From positions 1 to 64,000 of IMG/VR virus record IMGVR_UViG_3300049793_000366: a DNA stretch of 64,000 nt. One strand, written 5' to 3'. The position numbers and the translations under genes are program-made. Of the stretch, positions 21,492 to 60,348 are shown piece after piece; within the stretch, counting starts at the first letter, position 1; every line of letters begins with the position of its first letter. The notes beneath the pieces are model-generated. The model had not been told where the DNA came from and did no database searches. It saw only the letters and a list, made by a program, of their open reading frames with translations.

Positions 21492-23423
21492 ATGTCACAG
21501 AATATAGGTACATTAATAACCGCTCCAATTAGACCAAACGATTCATTAGATCCAATCGCATCAGCGTATTCAAATGAGTTACTTGGTGGTTTGCATTCTG
21601 TTACGTCAAGTTCAGACCGTGATGCTATCATGTCAGTTAGAAGAACTTGGGGTATGATGTGTTATGTAGTCAATGATGATACAACGTATCAATTAACTTA
21701 TAACTATGTTGATAATACATTAACTAATAATAATAACTGGAAAGAATTCACTGGTGGTTCTGGTGGCGCGGCTTCAACTGAGTGGTTGGATTCTGCTATA
21801 TCTGCTACATATACAGCTCCACCAGCAACATATTCAGTTGGTGATAGATATTTAATAATAGGAGCAGGAAGTGGTGCTTGGTCTGGTAATACAGATAAGG
21901 TAACTGAATATAAATCTTCACCATCTCTTGGTTGGTATTATACTGAGCCAACTGATAACACAGCACTAAGAATTGATAATCAAGATAATGCTGTTTATAG
22001 ATATGAAGGTGTTTATCCTTCTGGCCAATGGGCTGCTGATAGAGCAAATCAAATTCTTTATGTTACGACTACTACATCTGATGCTATGGCATACAGTGGT
22101 ACTGTTTTACCTGTGTTAAATTATTACACAAAAGATACGATATACTTAGTACAACCAATACTTACAAACGTTGGTCCTGTTACGATAGATGTCAATGCTC
22201 TTGGTGCGGTTAATGTTAAGAAAGATAATGGTTCAGGTAGCTTAGTTGACTTAGATGCTGGTGAATTTAAATCTGGTATAATTTATAACTTAACATTTGA
22301 TGGATCTTACTTTCAAGCACAGATAGCACCTAATACGTTACCTGCACCTGATAAGTTTACGATTAGTGCGTTGGGTACTAACTCATATGTTGGTACAGCA
22401 TCACCTACACTTGGTACATATTCTGCTGGTCATATTTATTTAGTTGATTTTGAATATTCAAATACCAGCTCAGTAGTCAGTTTAGACATCGATTCTTTGG
22501 GTCCAATTGACTTAATTAAATTTGATGAAACAGGTCCTGTTCCACTAGTAGCAGATGATTTGGAACCTGGTCAGATATATTATTTAGTTTATGATGGTAG
22601 TAACTTCCAAGTTAATACGAGTGACCCAGCAGCGGCTCCTGTATCATATACAAACTTAGCACCAGTTCCAACTACAATGGGTGGAATTTCTGCTGGTACA
22701 ACATTTAGTAATACATCAATGCAACAGATGTGGACAATGTTATTATACCCATATCAAGTAGCTAACTTCACCGGTTTTTCAATCGGTGGTGCGGCTCCTG
22801 CTACATTTGAAGTTGGATATACAATATCAGCGGGTACATATTCGTTCGTATGGTCAGAGTCTTATCCAGCTAACGTTACTAACTCTATTACACTTAGAGA
22901 TATATCAAGTAGTAAAATTTTATTAACTGGTACAGCTAATGATTTCAATGCTGCTATTGGTATTACATATTCAATTCGTAAAACTGTTGCTACATCTCAT
23001 GTGTGGAGAGTATCTGGTACTAGAACAAACGGAACACCTATTTCGAGAGATGTATCATCATCTTGGAGATGGAGACTATTCTATGGTGCTACAACATCTA
23101 CATCACCAACAGCGAGTGGTGTACAAAGTTTATCAAATCAGTCATTAGCAACAACATTTGCTGGTACTTATAACTTCACTAATGGTGGTTATAAATATGT
23201 GGGATATCCAAGTGCGTTTGGTAATGTAACATTATTTAAAGATTTCAATACAAATTTATCTATTGCTATGGCTGATGCGTCTGATGGTTACACATCAGTT
23301 CAACCAAATGGATTAAATTATAAATCAGTGAACATAACAAACGTACACGGTGTTACAACTGGGTATAAGTTGTTTAGAACAAAAAATATATTAGGTGGTA
23401 CTATTAGTATAGTAGTGTCATAA
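21492..23423 (+). CDS. modular tail fibre/appendage protein with DUF2793-like domain
   Basis: YLIIGAGSGAWSG..GWYY segment; duplicated LDIDSLG..L.A..L..G.IY.L.YDG..FQ module. Confidence 0.65.
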   Translation: MSQNIGTLITAPIRPNDSLDPIASAYSNELLGGLHSVTSSSDRDAIMSVRRTWGMMCYVVNDDTTYQLTYNYVDNTLTNNNNWKEFTGGSGGAASTEWLDSAISATYTAPPATYSVGDRYLIIGAGSGAWSGNTDKVTEYKSSPSLGWYYTEPTDNTALRIDNQDNAVYRYEGVYPSGQWAADRANQILYVTTTTSDAMAYSGTVLPVLNYYTKDTIYLVQPILTNVGPVTIDVNALGAVNVKKDNGSGSLVDLDAGEFKSGIIYNLTFDGSYFQAQIAPNTLPAPDKFTISALGTNSYVGTASPTLGTYSAGHIYLVDFEYSNTSSVVSLDIDSLGPIDLIKFDETGPVPLVADDLEPGQIYYLVYDGSNFQVNTSDPAAAPVSYTNLAPVPTTMGGISAGTTFSNTSMQQMWTMLLYPYQVANFTGFSIGGAAPATFEVGYTISAGTYSFVWSESYPANVTNSITLRDISSSKILLTGTANDFNAAIGITYSIRKTVATSHVWRVSGTRTNGTPISRDVSSSWRWRLFYGATTSTSPTASGVQSLSNQSLATTFAGTYNFTNGGYKYVGYPSAFGNVTLFKDFNTNLSIAMADASDGYTSVQPNGLNYKSVNITNVHGVTTGYKLFRTKNILGGTISIVVS

Positions 23424-30706: not shown

Positions 30707-33700
30707 ATGGATAAAAAGAGTATAGACGCACTTTCAAATCTATCCGATGCGATTGACCAATTGAGTCAGGCTATCATCGATGCCAAGCAAAAGCCTGGTA
30801 ACGCTGGTAATCCATTAACTCAAGCGGTTGACTTGGTTAATCAGTTAAAAGAAATAAACCAGAGTTTATCAGAGATTAAGGATGATAATAAGAAGATGAT
30901 GTCCAAACAAGACGAAATTCTTAAGCTCTCTAAAGAAATAAAAAACAGCAAAGAGAATAACAATGTGTTCTCACAAGCTGGTGACAATAAGCAAAAGATA
31001 AAAGATGGTGTTTCATCCATCGTAGTTATAGCAGTTGGTGTTCTTGCCATTGGTATGGCTTTCAAATTAATAGGTAAGGTAGACTTTCTATCAGTAGTTG
31101 CTTTGGGTCTTGCTATTCCATTAATAGCACTTGCTTTCAGTGAGGTTATTAAAGCGAAGATAACAATAAAAGATGCGCTACAAGCTAGTGGTGCTTTAGT
31201 CATCATATCAGCTGCTATTGCTTTAGCTTCGATGGCATTGTCATATGTACAAACATTATCATTTACACAATTAGTAACTACTATTGGAATTGGTTTTGCG
31301 TTCTCATTATTATCAGAGTCAATTGGTGACTTATCCAGAAGTGTAGCTAAAGCATCTATTAAAGGTTTATTAATTATGCCATTTGTTTTAGTAGCGGCTT
31401 CAACTGCTATCATGGCATCTTCATGGATTTTAAAAGCTGTTCAACCAGTTGGGTTCTTCCAATTGCTTACTACTATTGGTATTGCGGCGGCTTTCGTTGT
31501 TCTGAGTTATGGTATTGGTAAATTAGCACATAGTCTAAAGGATGTTAGTATTAAAGGTGTAATATTATTACCTCTTGTATTGGTAACAACAGCATTCGCA
31601 ATATTAGGAGCATCATATTTATTAAAAGATGTTCAACCAGTTGGATTCTACCAGTTGCTTACTACTATTGGTATAGCCGCGGCATTCACTGTATTAAGTT
31701 ATGGTATAGGCAAACTTGCTAGTAGCTTGAAAGACGTTAGTATAAAGGGTGTAATATTATTACCTCTTGTATTGGTAACAACAGCAATGGCTATATTGGG
31801 TGCCTCGTATTTCTTAAAAGATGTTCAACCAGTTGGGTTAGTTCAGTTGTTGACATCAATAGGTATAGCCGCAGTATTTGTTGTTATATCGTTTGGGTTA
31901 GGCTTATTAGTTAAAGCTATGTCTAAGATTGATTGGGCTGATATATTGAAGTTACCATTAATGATGATAACAATCTCTGGTGCTATATGGGCATCATCAC
32001 ATATTTTAAAAGACACAGCAGTAATTCCATTTAGTAACTTATTTAATATTGTTCTATTTAGTATAACATTAACAATAGCTACAATAGCTGTTGGTGCCGC
32101 GATGTGGATTTTTGATAAGATGGGCTTATCAATATCAAATGCTATAAAGGGTGGATTGGTAGTAGTATTAGTTGCTCTTACAATCATGGCGGCATCACAA
32201 ATATTATCGATGGGTGATTATACTAACTTCCCAAGTATTGATTGGGCATTAGGTACAGGATTATCAATTGTTGCCTTCGGGTTATCAATGGCTGTATTAG
32301 GTTTTATTGCTATATCTGGTGTTGGTGCTGTTGCTCTTTTGGCTGGTGCTGTTGCTGTCTTAGGTGTAGCCGCTACAATAGTTGGTGTAGCCGAGATTCT
32401 TAATATGGGTAACTTTAAAAACTTCCCATCAGTTGCTTGGTCAACAAGTGTTGGTCTATCAATGACAGCATTCGCATTGGGTATGACTTTATTAGGTGGT
32501 ATCATAGTAGGTACATTTGGTCTTGGTGGTATTATGTTAGCGGCTGGTTCGAATGCGATGCTCACAGTAGCTCAAACAATCGTTGATGTTGGTGCTATTA
32601 TAGCTGGTGGTAAGTTTACTGGTGGTCCTAGTAAAGAATGGGCAGAGGGCATAGGATTAGCTCTGGGAGCATTTTCTCCAGTGTATGGATATCTAATGCA
32701 ATCACAAGTTATGAGTATATTTGGCGGTGATGCTATGAGTGGTGAAGAATATGGTCAAGTAATGGTTGATATAGCACAATCGATAATTAAAGTGGCTGGT
32801 GTTTTCAATGCGGCTGGTGTTAGTGTTTGGGCAAATGCTCCAACTAAAGAATGGGCAGAAGGAGTTGGTATGGCAATTGGAGCATTTGCTCCTGTTTATT
32901 CAGCTTTGGATAAAGGATTAGGTGATAGGTTGATGGATATGTTTATGGGAGAAACCGATAAGGCAAAACAGATGAGTGATGCTATGGTTACTATCGCTAA
33001 AGCAATCATTGACGTAGCTGCTATATTCGCGGCATCAACACAACAATATAAAGGAGGTCCGTCAAAAGAATGGGGTGAGGGAGTTGGTTCCGCTATTTCA
33101 GGATTCGCAGTAGCGTATGCCGCATTAGAAGAAGCTGACTTAGAGGACTCTGATGATATATTAGAATATGACGGAGCATTGAATGAAATTGTTAACTCAA
33201 TTATTAAGGTAGCTCGTAAGTTTAATGTTGCTGGTGATATATTCAAAACAAGTGTAAATAAATCATTCTTTGAAAATATAGCTGGAAACATAGAATCTTA
33301 TTTAGATTTAATTGATGATGTTTCGGTTGGATCTTCTGTAAGTACAATGGTTCTTAATAACATCGTTGACCAAATTATATTAATAGCTAAGAAGTTTAAC
33401 TCACTTGGTGACAACTTCAATGTTTCTATACCTAAATCATTCTTTGATAGCGTAGCCGCTAACGTAAAAGCATACATAGCAATTACTGATTCAATTCCTA
33501 TGTCAAGTGGATTATTCGGTGGTTCTAAGCTTAAAAATATAATTAGTGATATAGCTCTTATGGCTGTTGCTTATAAGAAATTAGCTAAATCAATCGGTGA
33601 GGTTGGTAGTAACTTAACTCAATTGGGTGAAGAGCAATTTAATAATTTAAAATATCTAACTGCTAACATAGCAATGTTATCACTTGGTGATCCTGACCAG

Positions 33701-34006
33701 TTAGAAGCTAATATTGATTTATTAGAAGAGAAGTCAGAAACTCTTGCTGAGACATTCCAAAAAATGTCTGAAGAGTTAGCTAAACAGAATGATATCTCAT
33801 TATCATCATCTACTGATATTAAAGCAAGCACATCCGTTAAGACTGGTACCGCTAATAAAGTTACTAAAACTAACGATGATTTATATAGCGCACTTCAACA
33901 AATAGATGCTAAATTGGCTACAATAGCTTCTAGTGCTAATAATTTAGCGAGCTATGTTGATGAACTTAGAGGTAAAACTAAACCAACAATTACTAATAAA
34001 CGATAA
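30707..34006 (+). CDS. tape-measure-like protein with many hydrophobic helical repeats
   Basis: 1099 aa; coiled-coil ends, 64-aa hydrophobic repeats, three P[ST]KEW.EG.G repeats; TAATATATA upstream. Confidence 0.6.
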   Translation: MDKKSIDALSNLSDAIDQLSQAIIDAKQKPGNAGNPLTQAVDLVNQLKEINQSLSEIKDDNKKMMSKQDEILKLSKEIKNSKENNNVFSQAGDNKQKIKDGVSSIVVIAVGVLAIGMAFKLIGKVDFLSVVALGLAIPLIALAFSEVIKAKITIKDALQASGALVIISAAIALASMALSYVQTLSFTQLVTTIGIGFAFSLLSESIGDLSRSVAKASIKGLLIMPFVLVAASTAIMASSWILKAVQPVGFFQLLTTIGIAAAFVVLSYGIGKLAHSLKDVSIKGVILLPLVLVTTAFAILGASYLLKDVQPVGFYQLLTTIGIAAAFTVLSYGIGKLASSLKDVSIKGVILLPLVLVTTAMAILGASYFLKDVQPVGLVQLLTSIGIAAVFVVISFGLGLLVKAMSKIDWADILKLPLMMITISGAIWASSHILKDTAVIPFSNLFNIVLFSITLTIATIAVGAAMWIFDKMGLSISNAIKGGLVVVLVALTIMAASQILSMGDYTNFPSIDWALGTGLSIVAFGLSMAVLGFIAISGVGAVALLAGAVAVLGVAATIVGVAEILNMGNFKNFPSVAWSTSVGLSMTAFALGMTLLGGIIVGTFGLGGIMLAAGSNAMLTVAQTIVDVGAIIAGGKFTGGPSKEWAEGIGLALGAFSPVYGYLMQSQVMSIFGGDAMSGEEYGQVMVDIAQSIIKVAGVFNAAGVSVWANAPTKEWAEGVGMAIGAFAPVYSALDKGLGDRLMDMFMGETDKAKQMSDAMVTIAKAIIDVAAIFAASTQQYKGGPSKEWGEGVGSAISGFAVAYAALEEADLEDSDDILEYDGALNEIVNSIIKVARKFNVAGDIFKTSVNKSFFENIAGNIESYLDLIDDVSVGSSVSTMVLNNIVDQIILIAKKFNSLGDNFNVSIPKSFFDSVAANVKAYIAITDSIPMSSGLFGGSKLKNIISDIALMAVAYKKLAKSIGEVGSNLTQLGEEQFNNLKYLTANIAMLSLGDPDQLEANIDLLEEKSETLAETFQKMSEELAKQNDISLSSSTDIKASTSVKTGTANKVTKTNDDLYSALQQIDAKLATIASSANNLASYVDELRGKTKPTITNKR
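31350..31920 (+). repeat. 192-nt coding tandem repeat (about 3 copies)
   Basis: GTTCAACCAGTTGG at 31439, 31631 and 31823; spacing is exactly 192 nt. Confidence 0.85.
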
Positions 34007-35763: not shown

Positions 35764-37749
35764 TTAGTCTAATGGTGGTAACTCGATGTCTCCACCGCCA
35801 CCTCCACCACCACCGGATGCGTAGTATGCCACAGTTGTGTATTTACTTTCAACCATCCAATCAATGTTAGTAGATGCTATACCTTTAACAGAAACTTTAA
35901 CAACTTTCGCTGTATTATCAACTGTATAAGAAGCCGAACAACCAGACATAGAACCATCAAAGTGATAAAGAGTTAATGATACTGGTTTAGGATTTGTAAT
36001 AGAGTTTAAAGCAACATCATATCTTGCTACACCTTCTCCTTGTGCTATGTATGCTAATCCGTTTGAAGATACACCCATTATCTGAACGTTAAACTTATAT
36101 ACAACACCAGATACTCCAGTAGGTGGATATAAACCAAATTTCTCAGACACACCATCACAGAATATTTCAGTTAATGTTGCATTAGACGTTGTACCATGAT
36201 GTGTTACGAATCCATATTGATTTCCAATACGAGGACCTCTTGACCATTCTGCGTGTCTATTTGAAGCCGCTAAACCACCAGCGTGTGAGTAGCTAGAGTT
36301 TGCGTGTGCGCTACCTTCTGCGTGAGAAGCCATACCAGCAGCGATAGAAAATGCACCTTCTGCGTGAGAATAAGTAGCACTTGCTGTCGTATAATAACCC
36401 TGTACGTGTGATGCTACACCAACTGCATTTGCTCTAAGACCTTCTGCGTGAGAATAATCACCAGTAGCTAAATTTAAAAATCCTTCAACGTGTGTTGATA
36501 CTCCACCACTCACGTTACTTACACCCTCAACGTGTGAGTATGAACCAGATGCTATATTAAGATAACCTTCTGCGTGAGAACCCAAACCTGAGGCAATATT
36601 ATAACGACCTTCTGCGTGAGATGCTAAATTACTCGCTGTTGTACCACTACCTTCTGCGTGAGAAGATGTACCAGTAGAAAATGTGTTATCACCTTCTGAA
36701 TATGAATAGTTACCTGATGCTACTGTTGTATTACCAGAGGCATGAGAAGCGGAACCAGATGCTACGTTACCATATCCCTCAACGTGAGAGTTAGCACCAT
36801 CAGCAGAGTTATTATGTCCTTCTGAATGTGAGTTAGCAGCACTGGCTGTTGTGCCACTACCTTCTGCGTGAGAGTTTATACCATCAGCAATTGTTGAATT
36901 ACCTTCGCTATGTGAGTTATTACCATTCGCAGTAGTACTTAAACCTTCTGAATGTGAGTTATCTCCGTTAGCTGTTGTTAATGAACCTTCTGAGTGTGAA
37001 TTATCACCATCAGCAGTTGTTATGTTACCCTCTGAGTGAGAGCTAATACCATTAGCAGTAGTTGTATTACCTTCGCTATGTGAATAGTTACCTATTGCTT
37101 TTGTGCTTACACCTTCTGAGTGAGCTGAGTTACCAGAAGCAATAGTTAATGAACCCTCTGAGTGAGCGCCATTATTAGTAGCTGATGTACCAAATCCCTC
37201 AGCGTGTGAAAAATGTCCACTCGCTGTTGTACCACTACCTTCTGAATGTGATGCTGTTGCTGATGAATATGTACTTAAACCTTCTGCGTGAGAACCCACC
37301 CCAGTTGATTTAGTATAAACACCCTCTGAGTGTCCACCACTACCACTTGCTGTTGTACCAAGTCCTGTTGCTTGTGCGGCATATCCACTCGCTTTTGTAT
37401 TATATCCAGAAGCCATTGCGCTTTCACCAGAAGCATTTGCTGAATTACCGTGTGCGAATGACGCTGCTCCGGTAGCTGATACGATAATACCACTCGCAAA
37501 TGAATAAGATCCTGATGCGTTATTTGTTTCACCTATTGAAAATGAGTAAACCCCATTATCAGCAATAATAGAACGTGTACCTATGGTACCTTTGTCTATG
37601 AAGGCAGTATAGATAACATCTCTGAAATCCTTAGCCGTGATATCCCCTGTTACGTTATCTTTCAATACGTATAACATTGATGAAAGTGAGGTGTCTGGGC
37701 TTTGACCCAGTGGAGATGATCCTAAATAAGTACTTGTTGTCCCTGCCAT
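35764..37749 (-). CDS. tail fibre/adhesin with YadA-head-like beta-roll repeats
   Basis: About 29 copies of the 14-aa unit SH[AS]EGxxTxAxGxx. Confidence 0.8.
   Translation of the reverse strand: MAGTTSTYLGSSPLGQSPDTSLSSMLYVLKDNVTGDITAKDFRDVIYTAFIDKGTIGTRSIIADNGVYSFSIGETNNASGSYSFASGIIVSATGAASFAHGNSANASGESAMASGYNTKASGYAAQATGLGTTASGSGGHSEGVYTKSTGVGSHAEGLSTYSSATASHSEGSGTTASGHFSHAEGFGTSATNNGAHSEGSLTIASGNSAHSEGVSTKAIGNYSHSEGNTTTANGISSHSEGNITTADGDNSHSEGSLTTANGDNSHSEGLSTTANGNNSHSEGNSTIADGINSHAEGSGTTASAANSHSEGHNNSADGANSHVEGYGNVASGSASHASGNTTVASGNYSYSEGDNTFSTGTSSHAEGSGTTASNLASHAEGRYNIASGLGSHAEGYLNIASGSYSHVEGVSNVSGGVSTHVEGFLNLATGDYSHAEGLRANAVGVASHVQGYYTTASATYSHAEGAFSIAAGMASHAEGSAHANSSYSHAGGLAASNRHAEWSRGPRIGNQYGFVTHHGTTSNATLTEIFCDGVSEKFGLYPPTGVSGVVYKFNVQIMGVSSNGLAYIAQGEGVARYDVALNSITNPKPVSLTLYHFDGSMSGCSASYTVDNTAKVVKVSVKGIASTNIDWMVESKYTTVAYYASGGGGGGGGDIELPPLD
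36280..37530 (-). repeat. 42-nt coding tandem repeat
   Basis: ACCTTCTGCGTGAGA-type units recur with 42-nt period and encode SHAEG repeats. Confidence 0.85.
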
Positions 37750-51702: not shown

Positions 51703-51737
51703 AAAAGCCCAAGGACATTAAGCCTTGGGCTTTTTTT
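51703..51737 (+). terminator. attenuator terminator in the ileS leader
   Basis: AAAAGCCCAAGG-ACATTAAG-CCTTGGGCTTTTTTT; the 5' arm can alternatively pair with TCCTTGG at 51657-51663. Confidence 0.85.
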
Positions 51738-51774
51738 ATTGCAAAAAATCTAAAAACAAAATAAACTTAAAAAT

Positions 51775-54003
51775 ATGAAAGAGAAAAACCTAAATATGCC
51801 TCAAACAGACTTCACACAGAGGTCAGAGTCATTGAAACGAGAACCAGAATTACTTAAACTCTGGAATGAGCTTGATGTACTTAAGCTTAGAAATGAATTA
51901 AATAGTGATACATTCACTTTACACGATGGACCGCCGTATGCTAACGGTGATGTTCACGTTGGTCACGTACTTAATAAAGTATTAAAAGATATGGTTGTTA
52001 AGTATCAACTAATGAGTGGTAAGAAAGTCAATTTCAGACCAGGATTTGACTGTCATGGTTTACCAACTGAATTAGCTGTTCTCAAAAAGCATGGCAAACT
52101 TGATGTGTCTGAACTGAGAGTTAAATGTAAAGAGTGGGCAACTGAGTATTCAGATAAGCAACGCGAATCATTTAAATCATTGGGTGTTTTCGCTGAATGG
52201 GATAACCCGTATTACACGATGTCACCTGAGTTCGAAGTTGGACAGCTTAAAGTATTATATAAGCTCTTAAACGATGGATTGATGTATCTTGATAGTAGAC
52301 CTGTGTATTACTCACCATCATCAAGAACTGTTTTAGCCGAATCAGAGCTTGAATATAAAAACAGAAAAGACAAATCTGCCTATTTCACCTTGGATGCCGA
52401 AGATGGTAGATTATTATTGGTTTGGACTACACAACCTTGGACAGCGTTAGGTAACGTAGCTGTTTGTGTTAATAACAGACTGACGTATGTAACAGTTGAA
52501 CAAGATTCTAAACTATATGTTGTTGCTAAGGATTTAGCTCACGTATTGAGTGGTGTTGTTGTAGATGAATATAGTGGTGAGAGTCTTGTTGGTCTTAAGT
52601 ATCACAATAAACTAACTAATACAGAGGGTGTTGTTGTGTCTGATAAATTCGTTAAGTCAAATAGTGGTACTGGTTTAGTACACTTATGTCCAGCACATGG
52701 TGAGGATGACTTCGATGTGTGTCAGAAACATAATCTATCATGTGATGATTTGACTGATTCTGGTGGTAAACTTCTTCTGAATGGGTTATTCTGTTTAGAC
52801 CAAGGTTCAGAGTCAGTTCTTGATATGATGAAAGAAAATGGTATGTTATATTCAACGTCTGAATATGAACACTCTTATCCACATGACTGGCGAACAAACG
52901 GACCTGTTTATTTTAAGCTAACTGAGCAATTCTTCCTTGATTTGGCTGAGTTAAAAGAGAAAGTATTAGCTGTCCTACCTACTGTTGATTTCACAGAAGA
53001 GCGTTGGAAAAACAGATTAACGAATATGTTGAATTTAAGAGACCGTTGGTGTTTATCGCGTCAAAGAAAATGGGGATTCCCTTTAGCTGTATTTCTTAAA
53101 GACGGTAAGCCATTTACGCATCCAGAATTAGAAGCTCACTTATTTGAGTTGTTTAAGCAGAATGGCTCTGATGTTTGGTTTAACTCAACAGAAGATGAAT
53201 TATTACCTGAGCAATTTAAGAATACTGGTTTAGTTAAGTGTGATTATACATTAGATGTGTGGTTTGATTCTGGTGTTAGTTGGTATTCAGTTGTGGGTGG
53301 TCAATCAGATGTTTACTTCGAAGGTTCAGACCAACACAGAGGTTGGTTTCAGTCTTCATTACTAACATCAGTAGCAATGACTGGTGAAGCACCTTACAAA
53401 AAAGTACTTACACACGGATTTGTATTGGATGATAAGGGAAGAAAGATGTCTAAATCATTAGGTAATGTTGTAGAACCAAAGACTGTTCAACAAAAGTATA
53501 ATACTGATGTGCTTAGATTGTGGGCGGCTGTTGTTAACTATGGTGATGATGCACAATTAGGTGATGGTGTGTTGAAGAGCTGTTCTGAATATTATTTCAA
53601 ATTTAGAAATACGCTTAAATATTTACTTGGTAATATGTATGGGTATGATTTTAGAGAGGTACAGCTAAATGAAAAAGATAGACTGGCTCTTACTCGATGT
53701 GATGCTATGTATAATAATTGTTTAAAGTCATATTCCGAGTATAACTTCAGAAAAGTATTTGAAGAATTAATGTCGTGGGTTTCAGAATTTTCAAGTCAGT
53801 ACTTAGACAATCAAACAAAATCCTTTTTATATGAATATGATGTTAATTCCGATGAACGTCAACAATGTCAATATGTTCTTAGGTATGCATTAGAGCGTTT
53901 TATGAAAGTACTTGCTCCTATGTGTTCATTTTTAGCAGAAGACGCTTATCAACATTATGAGTTCAAACAAGATGTTTCTGTATTTATGGAAAAAATGGAA
54001 TAA
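51775..54003 (+). CDS. ileS: isoleucine--tRNA ligase (type 1), C-terminally shortened
   Basis: HDGPPYANG, HVGH, PGFDCHGLP, WTTQPWT, GTGLVH.CPAHG.DD, WCLSRQRKWG, EGSDQHRGWFQSSL, KMSKSLGN. Confidence 0.95.
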   Translation: MKEKNLNMPQTDFTQRSESLKREPELLKLWNELDVLKLRNELNSDTFTLHDGPPYANGDVHVGHVLNKVLKDMVVKYQLMSGKKVNFRPGFDCHGLPTELAVLKKHGKLDVSELRVKCKEWATEYSDKQRESFKSLGVFAEWDNPYYTMSPEFEVGQLKVLYKLLNDGLMYLDSRPVYYSPSSRTVLAESELEYKNRKDKSAYFTLDAEDGRLLLVWTTQPWTALGNVAVCVNNRLTYVTVEQDSKLYVVAKDLAHVLSGVVVDEYSGESLVGLKYHNKLTNTEGVVVSDKFVKSNSGTGLVHLCPAHGEDDFDVCQKHNLSCDDLTDSGGKLLLNGLFCLDQGSESVLDMMKENGMLYSTSEYEHSYPHDWRTNGPVYFKLTEQFFLDLAELKEKVLAVLPTVDFTEERWKNRLTNMLNLRDRWCLSRQRKWGFPLAVFLKDGKPFTHPELEAHLFELFKQNGSDVWFNSTEDELLPEQFKNTGLVKCDYTLDVWFDSGVSWYSVVGGQSDVYFEGSDQHRGWFQSSLLTSVAMTGEAPYKKVLTHGFVLDDKGRKMSKSLGNVVEPKTVQQKYNTDVLRLWAAVVNYGDDAQLGDGVLKSCSEYYFKFRNTLKYLLGNMYGYDFREVQLNEKDRLALTRCDAMYNNCLKSYSEYNFRKVFEELMSWVSEFSSQYLDNQTKSFLYEYDVNSDERQQCQYVLRYALERFMKVLAPMCSFLAEDAYQHYEFKQDVSVFMEKME

Positions 54004-54042
54004 AAAGTTAATATATAATTATAATAAAAATATTATAAATAC

Positions 54043-54471
54043 ATGAAGCATATAAAAACATTTGAACAATATTCACCAGCAACCGAAGTGAATGAAGAAC
54101 TATTTGGTAAATTATTACAAGGTGGTAAAGACTTCATCATCGATGGTAAATCGTTAGCAGAACTTAAAACTAAATATGCTAATGTAGTTAAAGATGGTCA
54201 GGTTATTTCTAAAGCTAAAGAACAACCACTTGTTACTATTGAAGAAGGTAAACCATTAAGAGGTAACCCACCTACGATGGCTCGTATTAAAGAACTTAAA
54301 GCAAAATATAACATGGATGATGCACAAGCTTTAGAAGCGACATTAAAGATTTACGATTGGAATGGTAACATTTTAATGGATGGTGAGAAGTCAACATTTG
54401 ACACTAACACTAAGAAGTTCACAGTTATTCAAGCTAAAAGCACAAGAGGAACAGGTTTTAACGTAAGTTAA
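54043..54471 (+). CDS. hypothetical protein, N-terminal MKHIKTFE family
   Basis: MKHIKTFEQY..EVNEE; TAATATATA at 54009. Confidence 0.7.
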   Translation: MKHIKTFEQYSPATEVNEELFGKLLQGGKDFIIDGKSLAELKTKYANVVKDGQVISKAKEQPLVTIEEGKPLRGNPPTMARIKELKAKYNMDDAQALEATLKIYDWNGNILMDGEKSTFDTNTKKFTVIQAKSTRGTGFNVS

Positions 54472-59954: not shown

Positions 59955-59955
59955 G

Positions 59956-60348
59956 GGTGGAGAAGACGGGAATCGAACCCGTGTCCAATGATATCAGTGA
60001 ACTACTTTCTACAAGTTTATTTTAGTTTTCTAACTAAACCAAATAATCAATTTTTTTAACGACTAAAGAGATAATATGTCGCCGATTCAGTTATATACCA
60101 CTTGTGTCGAGAACTGTGGTTCCGAAGATTTTGTCGATTTTAAGCAATCTCAAGTTCTTCAACTTGAGTAGCAGTAGTCTTAGACTTTGCTAATACACTT
60201 AAAATATCGGATAACGATCCGACTTCGTTTGTAATTACGTTGCCGTTTACAGATTTTATCTACTAATTTATTAATCGCACGTTTTATTAGACAAAGCGAT
60301 ACTTGCTTATAACTCTCATCTCATCACCGTCGAAGCCTTAACTTCCCC
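59956..60348 (-). ncRNA. ssrA: tmRNA
   Basis: 5' GGGGAAG pairs with 3' CTTCTCC-A giving G3:U; TTCGAC D-loop analogue; T arm ACGGG-TTCGATT-CCCGT; internal tag frame 60244-60140. Confidence 0.93.

What the first reader, a model, noticed from the sequence alone, without database searches (positions are those of the whole stretch)
51775..54003. Compact type-1 IleRS lacking the C-terminal zinc-finger region
Seen: 742 aa with intact HVGH, KMSKS and editing motifs. It ends about 20 aa after APMCSFLAE, with no C-terminal CxxC..CxxC, and the next promoter motif follows immediately, which argues against an accidental truncation. Known: type-1 IleRS is normally over 900 aa and its C-terminal zinc domain helps tRNA recognition; many Bacteroidota use type-2 IleRS. 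Inference: a minimal enzyme with altered anticodon discrimination, possibly not acquired from the host lineage.
Basis: partly seen in the sequence, partly recalled or inferred. Interest (0 to 1): 0.6.

Follow-up and report, generated by a model that had tools for sequence, protein, structure and literature searches.

The report
Isoleucine-free, tail-less phage IleRS
A huge soil phage encodes a real, conserved isoleucyl-tRNA synthetase that lacks the tail thought essential for reading tRNA and contains not one isoleucine, and eight other synthetases in the genome likewise lack their own amino acid.

Summary
Window 51775-54003 (+) is an intact 742-aa type-1 IleRS. It has HVGH, KMSKS, the editing-site motifs and the helical anticodon domain (ARD1). 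It stops exactly where cellular IleRS1 continues with the junction domain (ARD2) and the zinc-binding domain (ZBD).

It is not an artefact. About 100 protein clusters (727-779 aa, down to 45% identity) end at the same residue, many on 0.3-0.7 Mb phage contigs. One is the curated 634,780-bp huge phage LR745206. They form one clade inside IleRS1. No separate tail gene exists in either genome.

The protein has 0 isoleucines where 59 are expected (p about 1e-27). Almost the whole family is Ile-free, against 3-8% Ile in cellular IleRS.

In the same genome ValRS-like, AspRS, ThrRS, PheRS-like and TyrRS have 0 cognate residues. GlnRS, LysRS and AsnRS have 1.

Best reading (inferred): a working Ile-tRNA ligase built to be translated when Ile-tRNA(Ile) is scarce. 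It would recognise tRNA without reading the wobble base. Charging activity is untested, and laboratory C-terminal truncations of IleRS lose it. I found no prior description.

The parts
51775..54003 (+). Complete CDS of the 742-aa phage IleRS (P0001), with 0 isoleucine codons
   Evidence: Ile count 0 against 59 expected, binomial p = 1.4e-27. AlphaFold model has mean pLDDT 94.1 and TM 0.96 to PDB 8c9f.
51955..51966 (+). Class I signature motif HVGH (residues 61-64). It is the HIGH motif with its Ile replaced by Val.
   Evidence: H61, G63 and H64 are invariant in a 66-sequence alignment.
52390..52959 (+). CP1 editing domain (about residues 206-395)
   Evidence: Matches isolated IleRS editing-domain structures 1wk8/1wny/1ue0 at query residues 213-370. 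pN is far below pS in this segment.
52423..52443 (+). Thr-rich editing peptide WTTQPWT (residues 217-223)
   Evidence: W217, T218, T219, W222 and T223 are invariant across phage and cellular sequences.
52666..52710 (+). Editing-site motif GTGLVHLCPAHGEDD (residues 298-312), ending in the conserved Asp
   Evidence: G298, G300, H303, P306, H308, G309 and D312 are invariant.
53443..53457 (+). KMSKS loop (residues 557-561)
   Evidence: K557, M558, K560 and S561 are invariant.
53677..53994 (+). Helical anticodon-binding domain ARD1 (Pfam Anticodon_1, residues 635-740). It is the last domain present.
   Evidence: PF08264 at 63.4 bits, profile positions 1-103 of 148. R611, L618, N620, S673, L685, Y686, R695, Q699 and E722 are invariant and shared with cellular IleRS1.
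54001..54027 (+). True end of the gene: TAA stop plus three further in-frame TAA. This is where ARD2 and ZBD would start in cellular IleRS1.
   Evidence: All 94 short homologues end at positions 780-786 of a 918-aa Bacillus IleRS1.
51703..51742 (+). Terminator-like GC hairpin plus T-run, about 35 nt upstream of the start codon. It probably ends the upstream transcription unit.
   Evidence: This is a consensus match only.
54043..54471 (+). Downstream 142-aa ORF of unknown function. It is not the missing IleRS tail and is not a conserved neighbour.
   Evidence: No Pfam or PHROG hit. No match to the ARD2+ZBD HMM. The downstream gene differs in relatives.

Best explanation
The gene encodes a genuine, selectively maintained phage isoleucyl-tRNA synthetase. 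It descends from bacterial type-1 IleRS. It keeps the catalytic Rossmann (HUP) core, the CP1 editing domain and the first anticodon-binding domain (ARD1). It has lost the junction domain (ARD2) and the zinc-binding domain (ZBD) that reads the wobble base N34. Every isoleucine has also been purged from it. Shown: the domain content, the conservation, the clade, the Ile-free composition, and the same cognate-residue purge in eight other aaRS of the genome. Inferred: the enzyme activates Ile, edits Val and charges tRNA(Ile). Candidate substrates are the phage's own GAU and UAU isoacceptors and possibly host tRNA(Ile). Recognition would use ARD1 (A35) and acceptor or D-arm elements but not N34. 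Because its mRNA has no Ile codon, it can be made when Ile-tRNA(Ile) is scarce, for example in a starved host, when host IleRS is lost or inhibited, or when tRNA(Ile) is depleted. It could then restore decoding of the Ile-rich phage proteome (8% Ile, 37% of it AUA).
For: Real and conserved:
- The identical protein is on a second assembly.
- A 735-aa orthologue sits in the curated 634,780-bp phage LR745206.
- About 100 clusters of 727-779 aa, down to 45% identity, all end at the same alignment position.
- pN is far below pS in every domain, including editing and ARD1.
- Catalytic, editing and ARD1 residues are invariant.
- The model has pLDDT 94 and TM 0.96 to IleRS1.

One ancient loss: the family is monophyletic (100) inside ZBD-bearing IleRS1. 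All 72 complete cellular hits are at least 902 aa.

No detached tail: there is no PF06827 hit and no ARD2+ZBD HMM hit in G000, in complete LR745206, or in 12 family loci, while positive controls are found.

Ile-free composition:
- 0 Ile against 59 expected.
- The family median is 0 Ile, against 3.0-8.2% in cellular IleRS1.
- Flanking genes have 7-10% Ile.
- 323 of the 742 codons are one substitution away from an Ile codon.
- The state is held over 9.8 substitutions per site of family tree.

Link to the canonical function:
- Nine of ten aaRS in the genome lack their own amino acid. The same holds in LR745206 and in a distant contig.
- 116 of 120 GlnRS homologues have exactly one Gln.
- Ile-free IleRS arose independently in two other viral lineages.
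- A purge of the cognate residue only makes sense if the enzyme's product, the cognate aminoacyl-tRNA, is what limits its own synthesis.

Substrates: the phage carries tRNA-Ile(GAU) and tRNA-Ile(UAU) and no TilS.
Against: Published work says C-terminally truncated IleRS still activates Ile but cannot transfer it to tRNA. It also says the ZBD is essential for N34 recognition and for aminoacylation (PMC11685878; PMC4861432 citing Glasfeld 1996). A tail-less enzyme is therefore expected to be a poor tRNA charger unless something compensates. I found no compensating insertion and no gain of positive charge in ARD1. Only the 396-600 segment is about 6 charge units less acidic than in cellular enzymes. 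No RNA or expression data exist for this phage. Without N34 reading the enzyme could mischarge tRNA(Met). The host is unknown. The purpose of the Ile purge is inferred from composition alone.
Confidence: 0.6

Rival explanations
1. It is an activation and editing enzyme only. It makes Ile-AMP and/or deacylates Val-tRNA(Ile) in trans, or transfers Ile to a non-tRNA acceptor, and does not itself charge tRNA(Ile). Non-translational aaRS paralogues work this way.
For: Engineered C-terminal truncations of IleRS keep activation but lose transfer (PMC11685878). IleRS paralogues with other jobs exist, for example SbzA (PMC9437257). Other class I aaRS-like genes of this phage are even more reduced: a ValRS-like gene without an editing domain and a LeuRS-like gene of 421 aa.
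Against: ARD1, whose only known role is tRNA anticodon-arm binding, is under purifying selection with invariant residues shared with cellular IleRS1. The cognate-residue purge across nine different aaRS, including full-length GlnRS, AspRS and TyrRS that score above curated cut-offs, points to a common canonical role in aminoacyl-tRNA supply. Several aaRS genes lie next to their cognate phage tRNA genes.
Confidence: 0.2
2. The tail function is supplied in trans. A separate phage or host protein with no detectable similarity to ARD2/ZBD docks on ARD1 and provides anticodon-loop binding.
For: Most of the roughly 470 ORFs of 120 aa or more in the 508-kb record have no recognisable function, judging from the few I sampled. 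The 508-kb record is a trimmed part of a 711,805-bp contig, so about 200 kb were not searched.
Against: Neither phage genome has an ARD2/ZBD homologue, and LR745206 is complete. G000 has no tRNA_bind (PF01588) domain. No gene is a conserved neighbour of the family across six contexts.
Confidence: 0.12
3. It is a decoy or resistance factor, for example a sink for an IleRS-targeting antibiotic or host toxin, or a tRNA(Ile) binder that shields the tRNA from a host nuclease. In this reading it is not a catalyst.
For: Soil is rich in aaRS inhibitors, and the HUP-1 type is the mupirocin-sensitive type (PMC13752280). Phage tRNAs are known to counter host tRNA-targeting defences (citation seen).
Against: All catalytic and editing residues are invariant over a very deep family, which a mere binder would not need. 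This reading does not explain why nine different aaRS each lack their own amino acid.
Confidence: 0.05
4. It is a pseudogene, frameshift or assembly error of a full-length ileS.
For: None beyond the short length.
Against: Dozens of independent assemblies give the same length and the same end. Four in-frame TAA follow the coding sequence. No tail-like sequence occurs in any frame downstream. Purifying selection is strong.
Confidence: 0.01

Closest known systems
Bacterial type-1 IleRS (P. megaterium IleRS1, PDB 8C9E/8C9F; S. aureus IleRS, 1FFY/1QU2)
   Same: Same fold over all 742 residues (TM 0.96, 38% identity). It has the canonical H-x-G-H and KMSKS motifs, the CP1 editing site and ARD1, and it groups inside the IleRS1 clade.
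   Different: It lacks the last ~135-165 residues, ARD2 plus the Cys4 ZBD whose Trp/Arg read G34 (PMC11685878). It has 0 Ile instead of 34-74. It is 35-41% identical to the nearest cellular enzyme found.
Laboratory C-terminal truncations of IleRS (E. coli minus the zinc peptide; T. thermophilus 1-821 crystal form 1ILE; yeast and Candida constructs)
   Same: Same domain content, ending after the helical anticodon domain.
   Different: Those are artificial and are reported active in Ile activation but inactive in transfer to tRNA (PMC11685878; PMC4861432). This one is natural, ancient and under purifying selection.
Natural C-terminal remodelling of IleRS: exchange of ARD3 for ZBD, and recurrent loss of the INS subdomain (PMC13752280, Oct 2026)
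   Same: The C-terminus is again the evolvable part of IleRS, and shortening is the trend.
   Different: That census (97,678 cellular sequences) required at least one type-specific C-terminal domain and included no viruses. A total loss of ARD2+ZBD was therefore outside its net and is not described there.
aaRS genes of huge phages (Al-Shayeb et al. 2020, PMC7162821)
   Same: Same kind of genome: the Mahaphage-like relative LR745206, up to 15 aaRS and about 60 tRNAs per genome. The proposed role is charging phage tRNAs.
   Different: That paper does not mention truncation (0 occurrences of 'truncat'). The passages I retrieved from it (a term search, not a full read) say nothing about amino-acid composition of the enzymes.
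'Cognate bias' of amino-acid biosynthetic enzymes (PMC4209129; Alves and Savageau 2005, from memory)
   Same: Same logic: an enzyme that supplies amino acid X contains less X, so it can still be made when X is short.
   Different: There it is a modest statistical depletion in biosynthetic enzymes of cells. Here it is a near-total purge (0 or 1 residues) in aminoacyl-tRNA synthetases of phages.
Giant-virus (Nucleocytoviricota) IleRS
   Same: A virus-encoded IleRS.
   Different: Those are IleRS2-type, full length (945-1084 aa) and have normal Ile content of 5.6-10.3% (loci L137, L147, L151, L185).

Membership tests
Isoleucine--tRNA ligase (TIGR00392 ileS equivalog) | Profile score above the curated cut-off | tested here: met
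   695.6 bits against a cut-off of 621.4. The next best family is valS at 382 bits, below its cut-off.
Isoleucine--tRNA ligase (TIGR00392 ileS equivalog) | Class I signature motifs HIGH and KMSKS | tested here: met
   HVGH at 61-64 and KMSKS at 557-561, invariant in the family.
Isoleucine--tRNA ligase (TIGR00392 ileS equivalog) | CP1 editing domain with Thr-rich peptide and conserved His/Asp | tested here: met
   WTTQPWT at 217-223. H303, H308 and D312 are invariant. It matches isolated editing-domain structures.
Isoleucine--tRNA ligase (TIGR00392 ileS equivalog) | Isoleucylation of tRNA(Ile) | not testable with these tools
   Needs enzyme assays. No RNA or expression data were found.
Type-1 IleRS (IleRS1, HUP-1 synthetic domain plus type-1 C-terminus) | Catalytic-domain phylogeny groups with IleRS1, not with IleRS2 or ValRS | tested here: met
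   Supports of 99-100 separate it from IleRS2 and ValRS. It nests with cyanobacterial and Bacillota IleRS1. IleRS-A archaeal sequences could not be included.
Type-1 IleRS (IleRS1, HUP-1 synthetic domain plus type-1 C-terminus) | Canonical HIGH arrangement (not the swapped GIHH variant) | tested here: met
   H-V-G-H. Criterion taken from PMC13752280.
Type-1 IleRS (IleRS1, HUP-1 synthetic domain plus type-1 C-terminus) | C-terminal ARD2 junction domain plus Cys4 zinc-binding domain (PF06827) | tested here: not met
   The protein ends at IleRS1 position ~782. There is no PF06827 hit and no ARD2+ZBD HMM hit in the gene, its flanks or two phage genomes.
Type-1 IleRS (IleRS1, HUP-1 synthetic domain plus type-1 C-terminus) | Mupirocin sensitivity | not testable with these tools
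   Biochemical property.
Type-2 IleRS (IleRS2 / eukaryote-like) | HUP-2 catalytic domain and ARD2(+INS)+ARD3 C-terminus | tested here: not met
   305 bits to PmIleRS2 against 571 bits to PmIleRS1. MupA/MupB models score far below their cut-offs. It is separated from IleRS2 in both trees. No C-terminal domains are present.
Huge-phage (Mahaphage-like) translation gene set | Encoded on a phage genome over 200 kb together with many tRNAs and other aaRS | tested here: met
   G000 is a 507,910-bp IMG/VR record with 61 tRNAs plus a tmRNA and 10 aaRS-like genes. Its orthologues in LR745206 are 71-82% identical. Neighbouring genes hit PHROG families.

The most novel reading that the evidence does not exclude
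Huge phages of this clade carry a self-starting translation kit. Each phage aaRS has been purged of its own amino acid, so it can be synthesised when exactly that aminoacyl-tRNA is missing. The IleRS member has also discarded the ARD2-ZBD module. If so, a natural IleRS charges tRNA(Ile), including the phage's rare UAU isoacceptor, without reading the wobble base. The field regards wobble-base reading as indispensable for telling tRNA(Ile) from tRNA(Met).
Probability: 0.4. Interest if true: 0.92.

Novelty: new variant of a known kind. Interest (0 to 1): 0.85.

Why it matters
There are three reasons.

First, the C-terminal zinc domain of bacterial IleRS is textbook-essential for aminoacylation and for separating tRNA(Ile) from tRNA(Met). 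A deep, conserved natural family without it either overturns that requirement or reveals a new job for an IleRS core. Both outcomes are directly testable with one recombinant protein.

Second, the near-total absence of the cognate amino acid in nine phage synthetases is a simple rule, and I found no description of it in the papers searched. It implies that phage aaRS are emergency enzymes meant to work when a particular charged tRNA has collapsed. That speaks to the open question of why phages carry aaRS at all.

Third, naturally residue-free and minimised synthetases are ready-made parts for bootstrapping cell-free or reduced-alphabet translation systems. They may also serve as candidate orthogonal pairs.

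Tried and rejected
- Split gene or detached tail: PF06827 and a custom HMM of the ARD2+ZBD region found nothing in G000, in complete LR745206, or in 12 family loci. tblastn of 15 cellular tails against G000 also found nothing. Controls L116 and L127 were detected.
- Read-through or recoding: the stop is TAA followed by three more in-frame TAA. The phage's suppressor tRNA reads TAG, so no alternative code was invoked.
- Conserved partner next door: the downstream and upstream genes differ in six contexts. The 142-aa downstream ORF has no Pfam or PHROG hit. For that reason no complex prediction was sent.
- Trans tRNA-binding domain (PF01588) and TilS: absent.
- Compensating insertions or extra positive charge in ARD1: none. 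Only residues 396-600 are less acidic than in cellular enzymes.
- Promoter claim: hits are at chance level.
- Expression: only one DNA run holds the sequence, a soil metagenome that may be the source sample. There is no RNA run.
- Host inference from GlnRS relatives: the top 120 hits are all unnamed metagenomic or phage sequences, so they give no host signal.
- dN/dS: dS is saturated (above 1), so only the qualitative result pN << pS is used.
- Archaeal IleRS-A sequences could not be obtained for the tree.
- Eight of the nine literature searches used were aimed at prior description of tail-less or cognate-free phage aaRS, and they found none. A ninth, on 'SrmL' or 'mystery ligase', found nothing relevant.
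Full report
**1. The observation**

Window 51775-54003 (+) is an uninterrupted ORF of 742 codons. It ends with TAA at 54001. Three more in-frame TAA follow within 27 nt.

The protein scores 695.6 bits on the NCBIfam ileS equivalog, whose cut-off is 621.4, but it covers only profile positions 2-803 of 861. Pfam sees tRNA-synt_1 at residues 26-594 and Anticodon_1 at 635-740.

Its best solved relatives are P. megaterium IleRS1 (571 bits, aligned to residues 6-777 of 921) and S. aureus IleRS (residues 4-782 of 917). Type-2 IleRS scores 305 bits.

HVGH (61-64), KMSKS (557-561) and the editing peptides WTTQPWT and GTGLVH..P.HGEDD are all present. The chain stops 20 residues after APMCSFLAE, and there is no CxxC pair.

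Only the 'promoter motif' argument fails, because promoter-like hits are at chance level (16 found against 17.0 +/- 3.6 in shuffles).

**2. Where it sits**

The window is the first 64 kb of a 507,910-bp IMG/VR virus record, estimated 97% complete. The same protein is also recorded on a 711,805-bp contig.

GC content is about 32%. The record holds 61 tRNAs and a tmRNA. Neighbouring genes hit PHROG families of unknown function.

The only sequencing run that holds the DNA is a soil metagenome. No RNA run was found.

The closest named relative is LR745206.1, a 634,780-bp 'uncultured phage'. That size matches one of the four largest curated complete genomes of Al-Shayeb et al. 2020. These belong to the Mahaphage clade, predicted to infect Bacteroidetes (PMC7162821).

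The host of the present phage was not determined here.

**3. Not an accident**

- LR745206 has a 735-aa orthologue, 73% identical.
- A second assembly carries the identical 742-aa protein.
- The word-index protein search returned about 100 clusters of 727-779 aa, from 89% down to 45% identity, many on contigs of 0.29-0.71 Mb. The list then jumps to full-length (906-1000 aa) cellular IleRS1 at 39-42% identity that carry the zinc-finger domain.
- In a joint alignment all 94 short proteins end at positions 780-786 of a 918-aa Bacillus IleRS1, just after a conserved SVF.
- Apart from the missing 135-aa tail there are only small indels of 8 residues or fewer.
- Pairwise codon comparisons give pN of 0.10-0.29 against pS of 0.57-0.83 in every domain, including editing and ARD1. 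dS is saturated, so only the direction is used.
- AlphaFold2 on a 66-sequence alignment gives mean pLDDT 94.1. Foldseek places the model on IleRS1 with TM 0.96 over the whole query.

**4. No detached tail**

PF06827 (zf-FPG_IleRS) has no hit in G000 or in the complete LR745206 genome.

I built an HMM from the ARD2+ZBD region of 15 cellular relatives. It finds nothing significant in six-frame translations of either genome or of 12 family loci. It does find the tail in two control viral IleRS.

The downstream 142-aa ORF has no family hit and is not conserved at that position in relatives.

There is no tRNA_bind domain and no TilS in G000.

**5. Origin**

The genome scan kept the best 80 of about 600 candidate stretches from 185,579 species-representative genomes. 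Those cellular hits are 35-41% identical and come from Cyanobacteriota, Bacillota, Pseudomonadota and other phyla. None is from Bacteroidota. All 72 complete ones are at least 902 aa.

In a FastTree tree (119 rows) and in an IQ-TREE tree restricted to 724 shared columns (81 rows), the short family is monophyletic with support 100. It lies inside IleRS1, separated from IleRS2 and ValRS by supports of 99-100. In the second tree it groups with cyanobacterial IleRS1 and one full-length viral IleRS (support 95), next to Bacillota (support 99).

The simplest history is one capture of a ZBD-bearing bacterial IleRS1, followed by one loss of ARD2+ZBD at the base of the family and long diversification in phages. 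The family subtree totals 9.8 substitutions per site for 22 tips.

Two caveats apply. The odd composition may distort the placement. Archaeal IleRS-A sequences could not be included.

**6.

The protein contains no isoleucine at all. The genome's ORFs average 8.0% Ile, so 59 Ile are expected (binomial p = 1.4e-27).

The HIGH motif is HVGH, and the usual WCISRQR is WCLSRQR. At 31 columns where cellular IleRS1 has Ile, the family has mostly Leu or Val, followed by Ala, Glu, Thr and Met.

The trait is family-wide. Most clusters have 0 Ile, the median is 0 and the maximum is 18. Cellular IleRS1 have 3.0-8.2% Ile. Genes flanking family members have 7-10% Ile.

Of the 742 codons, 323 are one substitution away from an Ile codon, and the genome is AT-rich. 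The absence of Ile therefore runs against mutation pressure.

**7. A genome-wide rule**

An unbiased scan of all ORFs for depleted residues put IleRS first. It also flagged several other ORFs that each lack one residue. NCBIfam identifies each of them as the synthetase for exactly that residue:

| Enzyme | Length (aa) | Cognate residues observed | Expected |
|---|---|---|---|
| IleRS | 742 | 0 Ile | 59 |
| ValRS-like | 509 | 0 Val | 30 |
| AspRS | 425 | 0 Asp | 29 |
| ThrRS core | 346 | 0 Thr | 21 |
| PheS-related ligase | 366 | 0 Phe | 18 |
| TyrRS | 359 | 0 Tyr | 17 |
| LysRS-like | 400 | 1 Lys | 34 |
| AsnRS | 392 | 1 Asn | 26 |
| GlnRS | 539 | 1 Gln | 16 |
| LeuRS-like (the exception) | 421 | 20 Leu | 35 |

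LR745206 shows the same pattern for Ile, Gln, Val, Asp, Asn and Phe. A distant contig has a Lys-free class IIb synthetase beside its family IleRS.

Of 120 GlnRS homologues at 70% identity or more, 116 have exactly one Gln.

Two other viral IleRS lineages are independently Ile-free. One is an 851-aa IleRS1 that keeps its ZBD (L127/L128). The other is a 988-aa IleRS2-type enzyme (L153). A 727-aa tail-less viral IleRS (L129) has normal Ile content. The two traits are therefore separable, and both recur in phages.

**8. How it most likely works**

Shown: an IleRS1 core with intact catalytic, editing and ARD1 residues, no ARD2 or ZBD, no Ile, strong constraint, and membership in a set of cognate-free aaRS.

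Established background (from the literature):
- In bacterial IleRS1 the ZBD reads G34 through Trp890 and Arg888.
- N34 is the sole discriminator between tRNA(Ile) and tRNA(Met).
- The ARD1 of S. aureus IleRS reads only A35.
- Truncated IleRS activates Ile but does not transfer it (PMC11685878; PMC13752280; PMC4861432).

Inference:
- A purge of the cognate residue pays off only if the cognate aminoacyl-tRNA limits the enzyme's own synthesis. The enzyme is therefore most likely still a supplier of Ile-tRNA(Ile), made to be translatable when that species is scarce.
- It would bind tRNA through ARD1 and the catalytic body, without wobble-base reading. That would let it accept both phage isoacceptors, GAU and the rare UAU.
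- AUA makes up 37% of Ile codons here and 53% in LR745206, and there is no TilS.
- Keeping the editing domain, when the phage's ValRS-like, LeuRS-like and ThrRS genes have lost theirs, fits the high Val misactivation of IleRS.

I put 0.6 on this reading. The main doubt is the published inactivity of truncated IleRS, together with the lack of any visible compensation.

**9. Novelty**

aaRS in huge phages are known (PMC7162821). The passages of that paper retrieved by a term search mention neither truncation nor amino-acid composition.

The October 2026 census of IleRS architectures covered cellular organisms only and required at least one C-terminal domain, so this family was excluded by design (PMC13752280).

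Eight literature searches aimed at prior description found no report of tail-less or cognate-free phage synthetases. The nearest concept is the mild 'cognate bias' of biosynthetic enzymes. A ninth search, on 'SrmL' or 'mystery ligase', found nothing relevant.

The library is incomplete, so prior description elsewhere cannot be excluded.

I class the finding as a new variant of a known kind, with high interest.

**10. Housekeeping**

No alternative genetic code was used. Read laying, complex prediction and the large representative-protein search were not needed.

Noticed in passing
G000 (own genome, outside the window): 396695-398224, 388279-389556, 322160-323200, 415861-416961, 424433-425512, 409122-410324, 323457-324635, 394421-396040: Eight further phage aaRS genes each (nearly) lack their own amino acid. 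ValRS-like has 0 Val, AspRS 0 Asp, ThrRS 0 Thr, PheS-related 0 Phe and TyrRS 0 Tyr. LysRS has 1 Lys, AsnRS 1 Asn and GlnRS 1 Gln. Expected counts are 16-34 each. The LeuRS-like gene (128103-129368) is the exception, with 20 Leu against 35 expected.
   Followed up: yes
G000: 396695-398224 (ValRS-like, 509 aa), 128103-129368 (LeuRS-like, 421 aa), 322160-323200 (ThrRS, 346 aa): Domain minimisation is general in this phage's synthetases. The ValRS-like and LeuRS-like proteins lack the CP1 editing domain and C-terminal domains. The ThrRS matches only profile positions 218-562, so it has no N-terminal TGS or editing domains. The LeuRS-like gene is 82% identical in LR745206.
   Followed up: partly
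L127/L128 (IMGVR_UViG_3300028603_002711 and 3300015214_000024), L153 (IMGVR_UViG_3300043411_001639), L129 (IMGVR_UViG_3300013121_000047): There are independent Ile-free viral IleRS lineages. One is an 851-aa IleRS1 with ZBD and 1 Ile. Another is a 988-aa IleRS2-type enzyme with 0 Ile. Conversely, a 727-aa tail-less viral IleRS has normal Ile content (56 Ile). Tail loss and Ile purge are therefore separable and recurrent.
   Followed up: partly
G000: tRNA-Gln x4 at 394071-394390 then GlnRS at 394421; tRNA-Lys x3 at 408768-409099 then LysRS at 409122; tRNA-Thr at 321700-321872 then ThrRS at 322160: Several cognate-free aaRS genes lie directly downstream of the phage's tRNA genes for the same amino acid, 23-31 nt away for Gln and Lys. 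This suggests co-transcribed tRNA-synthetase pairs. IleRS is the outlier, about 270 kb from tRNA-Ile.
   Followed up: partly
G000: tRNA-Ile(UAU) 420871-420944, tRNA-Ile(GAU) 320683-320757; LR745206: tRNA-Ile(UAU) at 366228-366302 and 389428-389499: Both phages carry the tRNA-Ile(UAU) isoacceptor, which is rare in bacteria. G000 has no TilS (LR745206 was not searched for it). AUA makes up 37% (G000) and 53% (LR745206) of Ile codons.
   Followed up: partly
G000: 415861-416961: The Phe-free 366-aa protein belongs to NCBIfam NF051887, 'PheS-related mystery ligase SrmL' (434 bits, cut-off 300). It also resembles monomeric mitochondrial-type PheRS. Its lack of Phe suggests that this 'mystery ligase' is a phenylalanine-handling synthetase.
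   Followed up: no
window 59955-60348 (-): A phage-encoded tmRNA (Rfam RF00023, 83.6 bits) with tag peptide AKSKTTATQVEELEIA. A relative's contig (L014) encodes SmpB near its IleRS.
   Followed up: no
G000: 121630-121702: A suppressor tRNA with anticodon CUA, which reads TAG. This hints at stage-specific TAG recoding in part of the genome. The IleRS gene ends in TAA and is unaffected.
   Followed up: no
L015: 470-1678 (JGI contig Ga0611982_000043): A 402-aa class IIb synthetase (PF01336+PF00152) with 0 Lys and 42 Arg lies 3.3 kb upstream of a family IleRS that is only 48% identical to the window's. The cognate-free rule therefore extends to distant relatives.
   Followed up: partly
G000 as a whole; window position 1: IMG/VR labels the 507,910-bp record a 'provirus', and the same proteins are recorded on a 711,805-bp contig. 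About 200 kb were probably trimmed by the virus-calling pipeline and were not available for searching.
   Followed up: no
G000: 258649-264231, 256546-258627, 141839-143719; window 35764-37749 (-), 21492-23423 (+), 30707-34006 (+): Several very large proteins are strongly depleted in Lys and Glu, for example 49 Lys against 158 expected in an 1860-aa protein. LR745206 shows the same. The cause is unknown. They may be structural or low-complexity proteins.
   Followed up: no
window 51703-51742 (+): A GC-rich hairpin followed by a T-run lies about 35 nt before the IleRS start codon. It looks like an intrinsic terminator of the upstream unit, so the IleRS gene may have its own start of transcription.
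   Followed up: no
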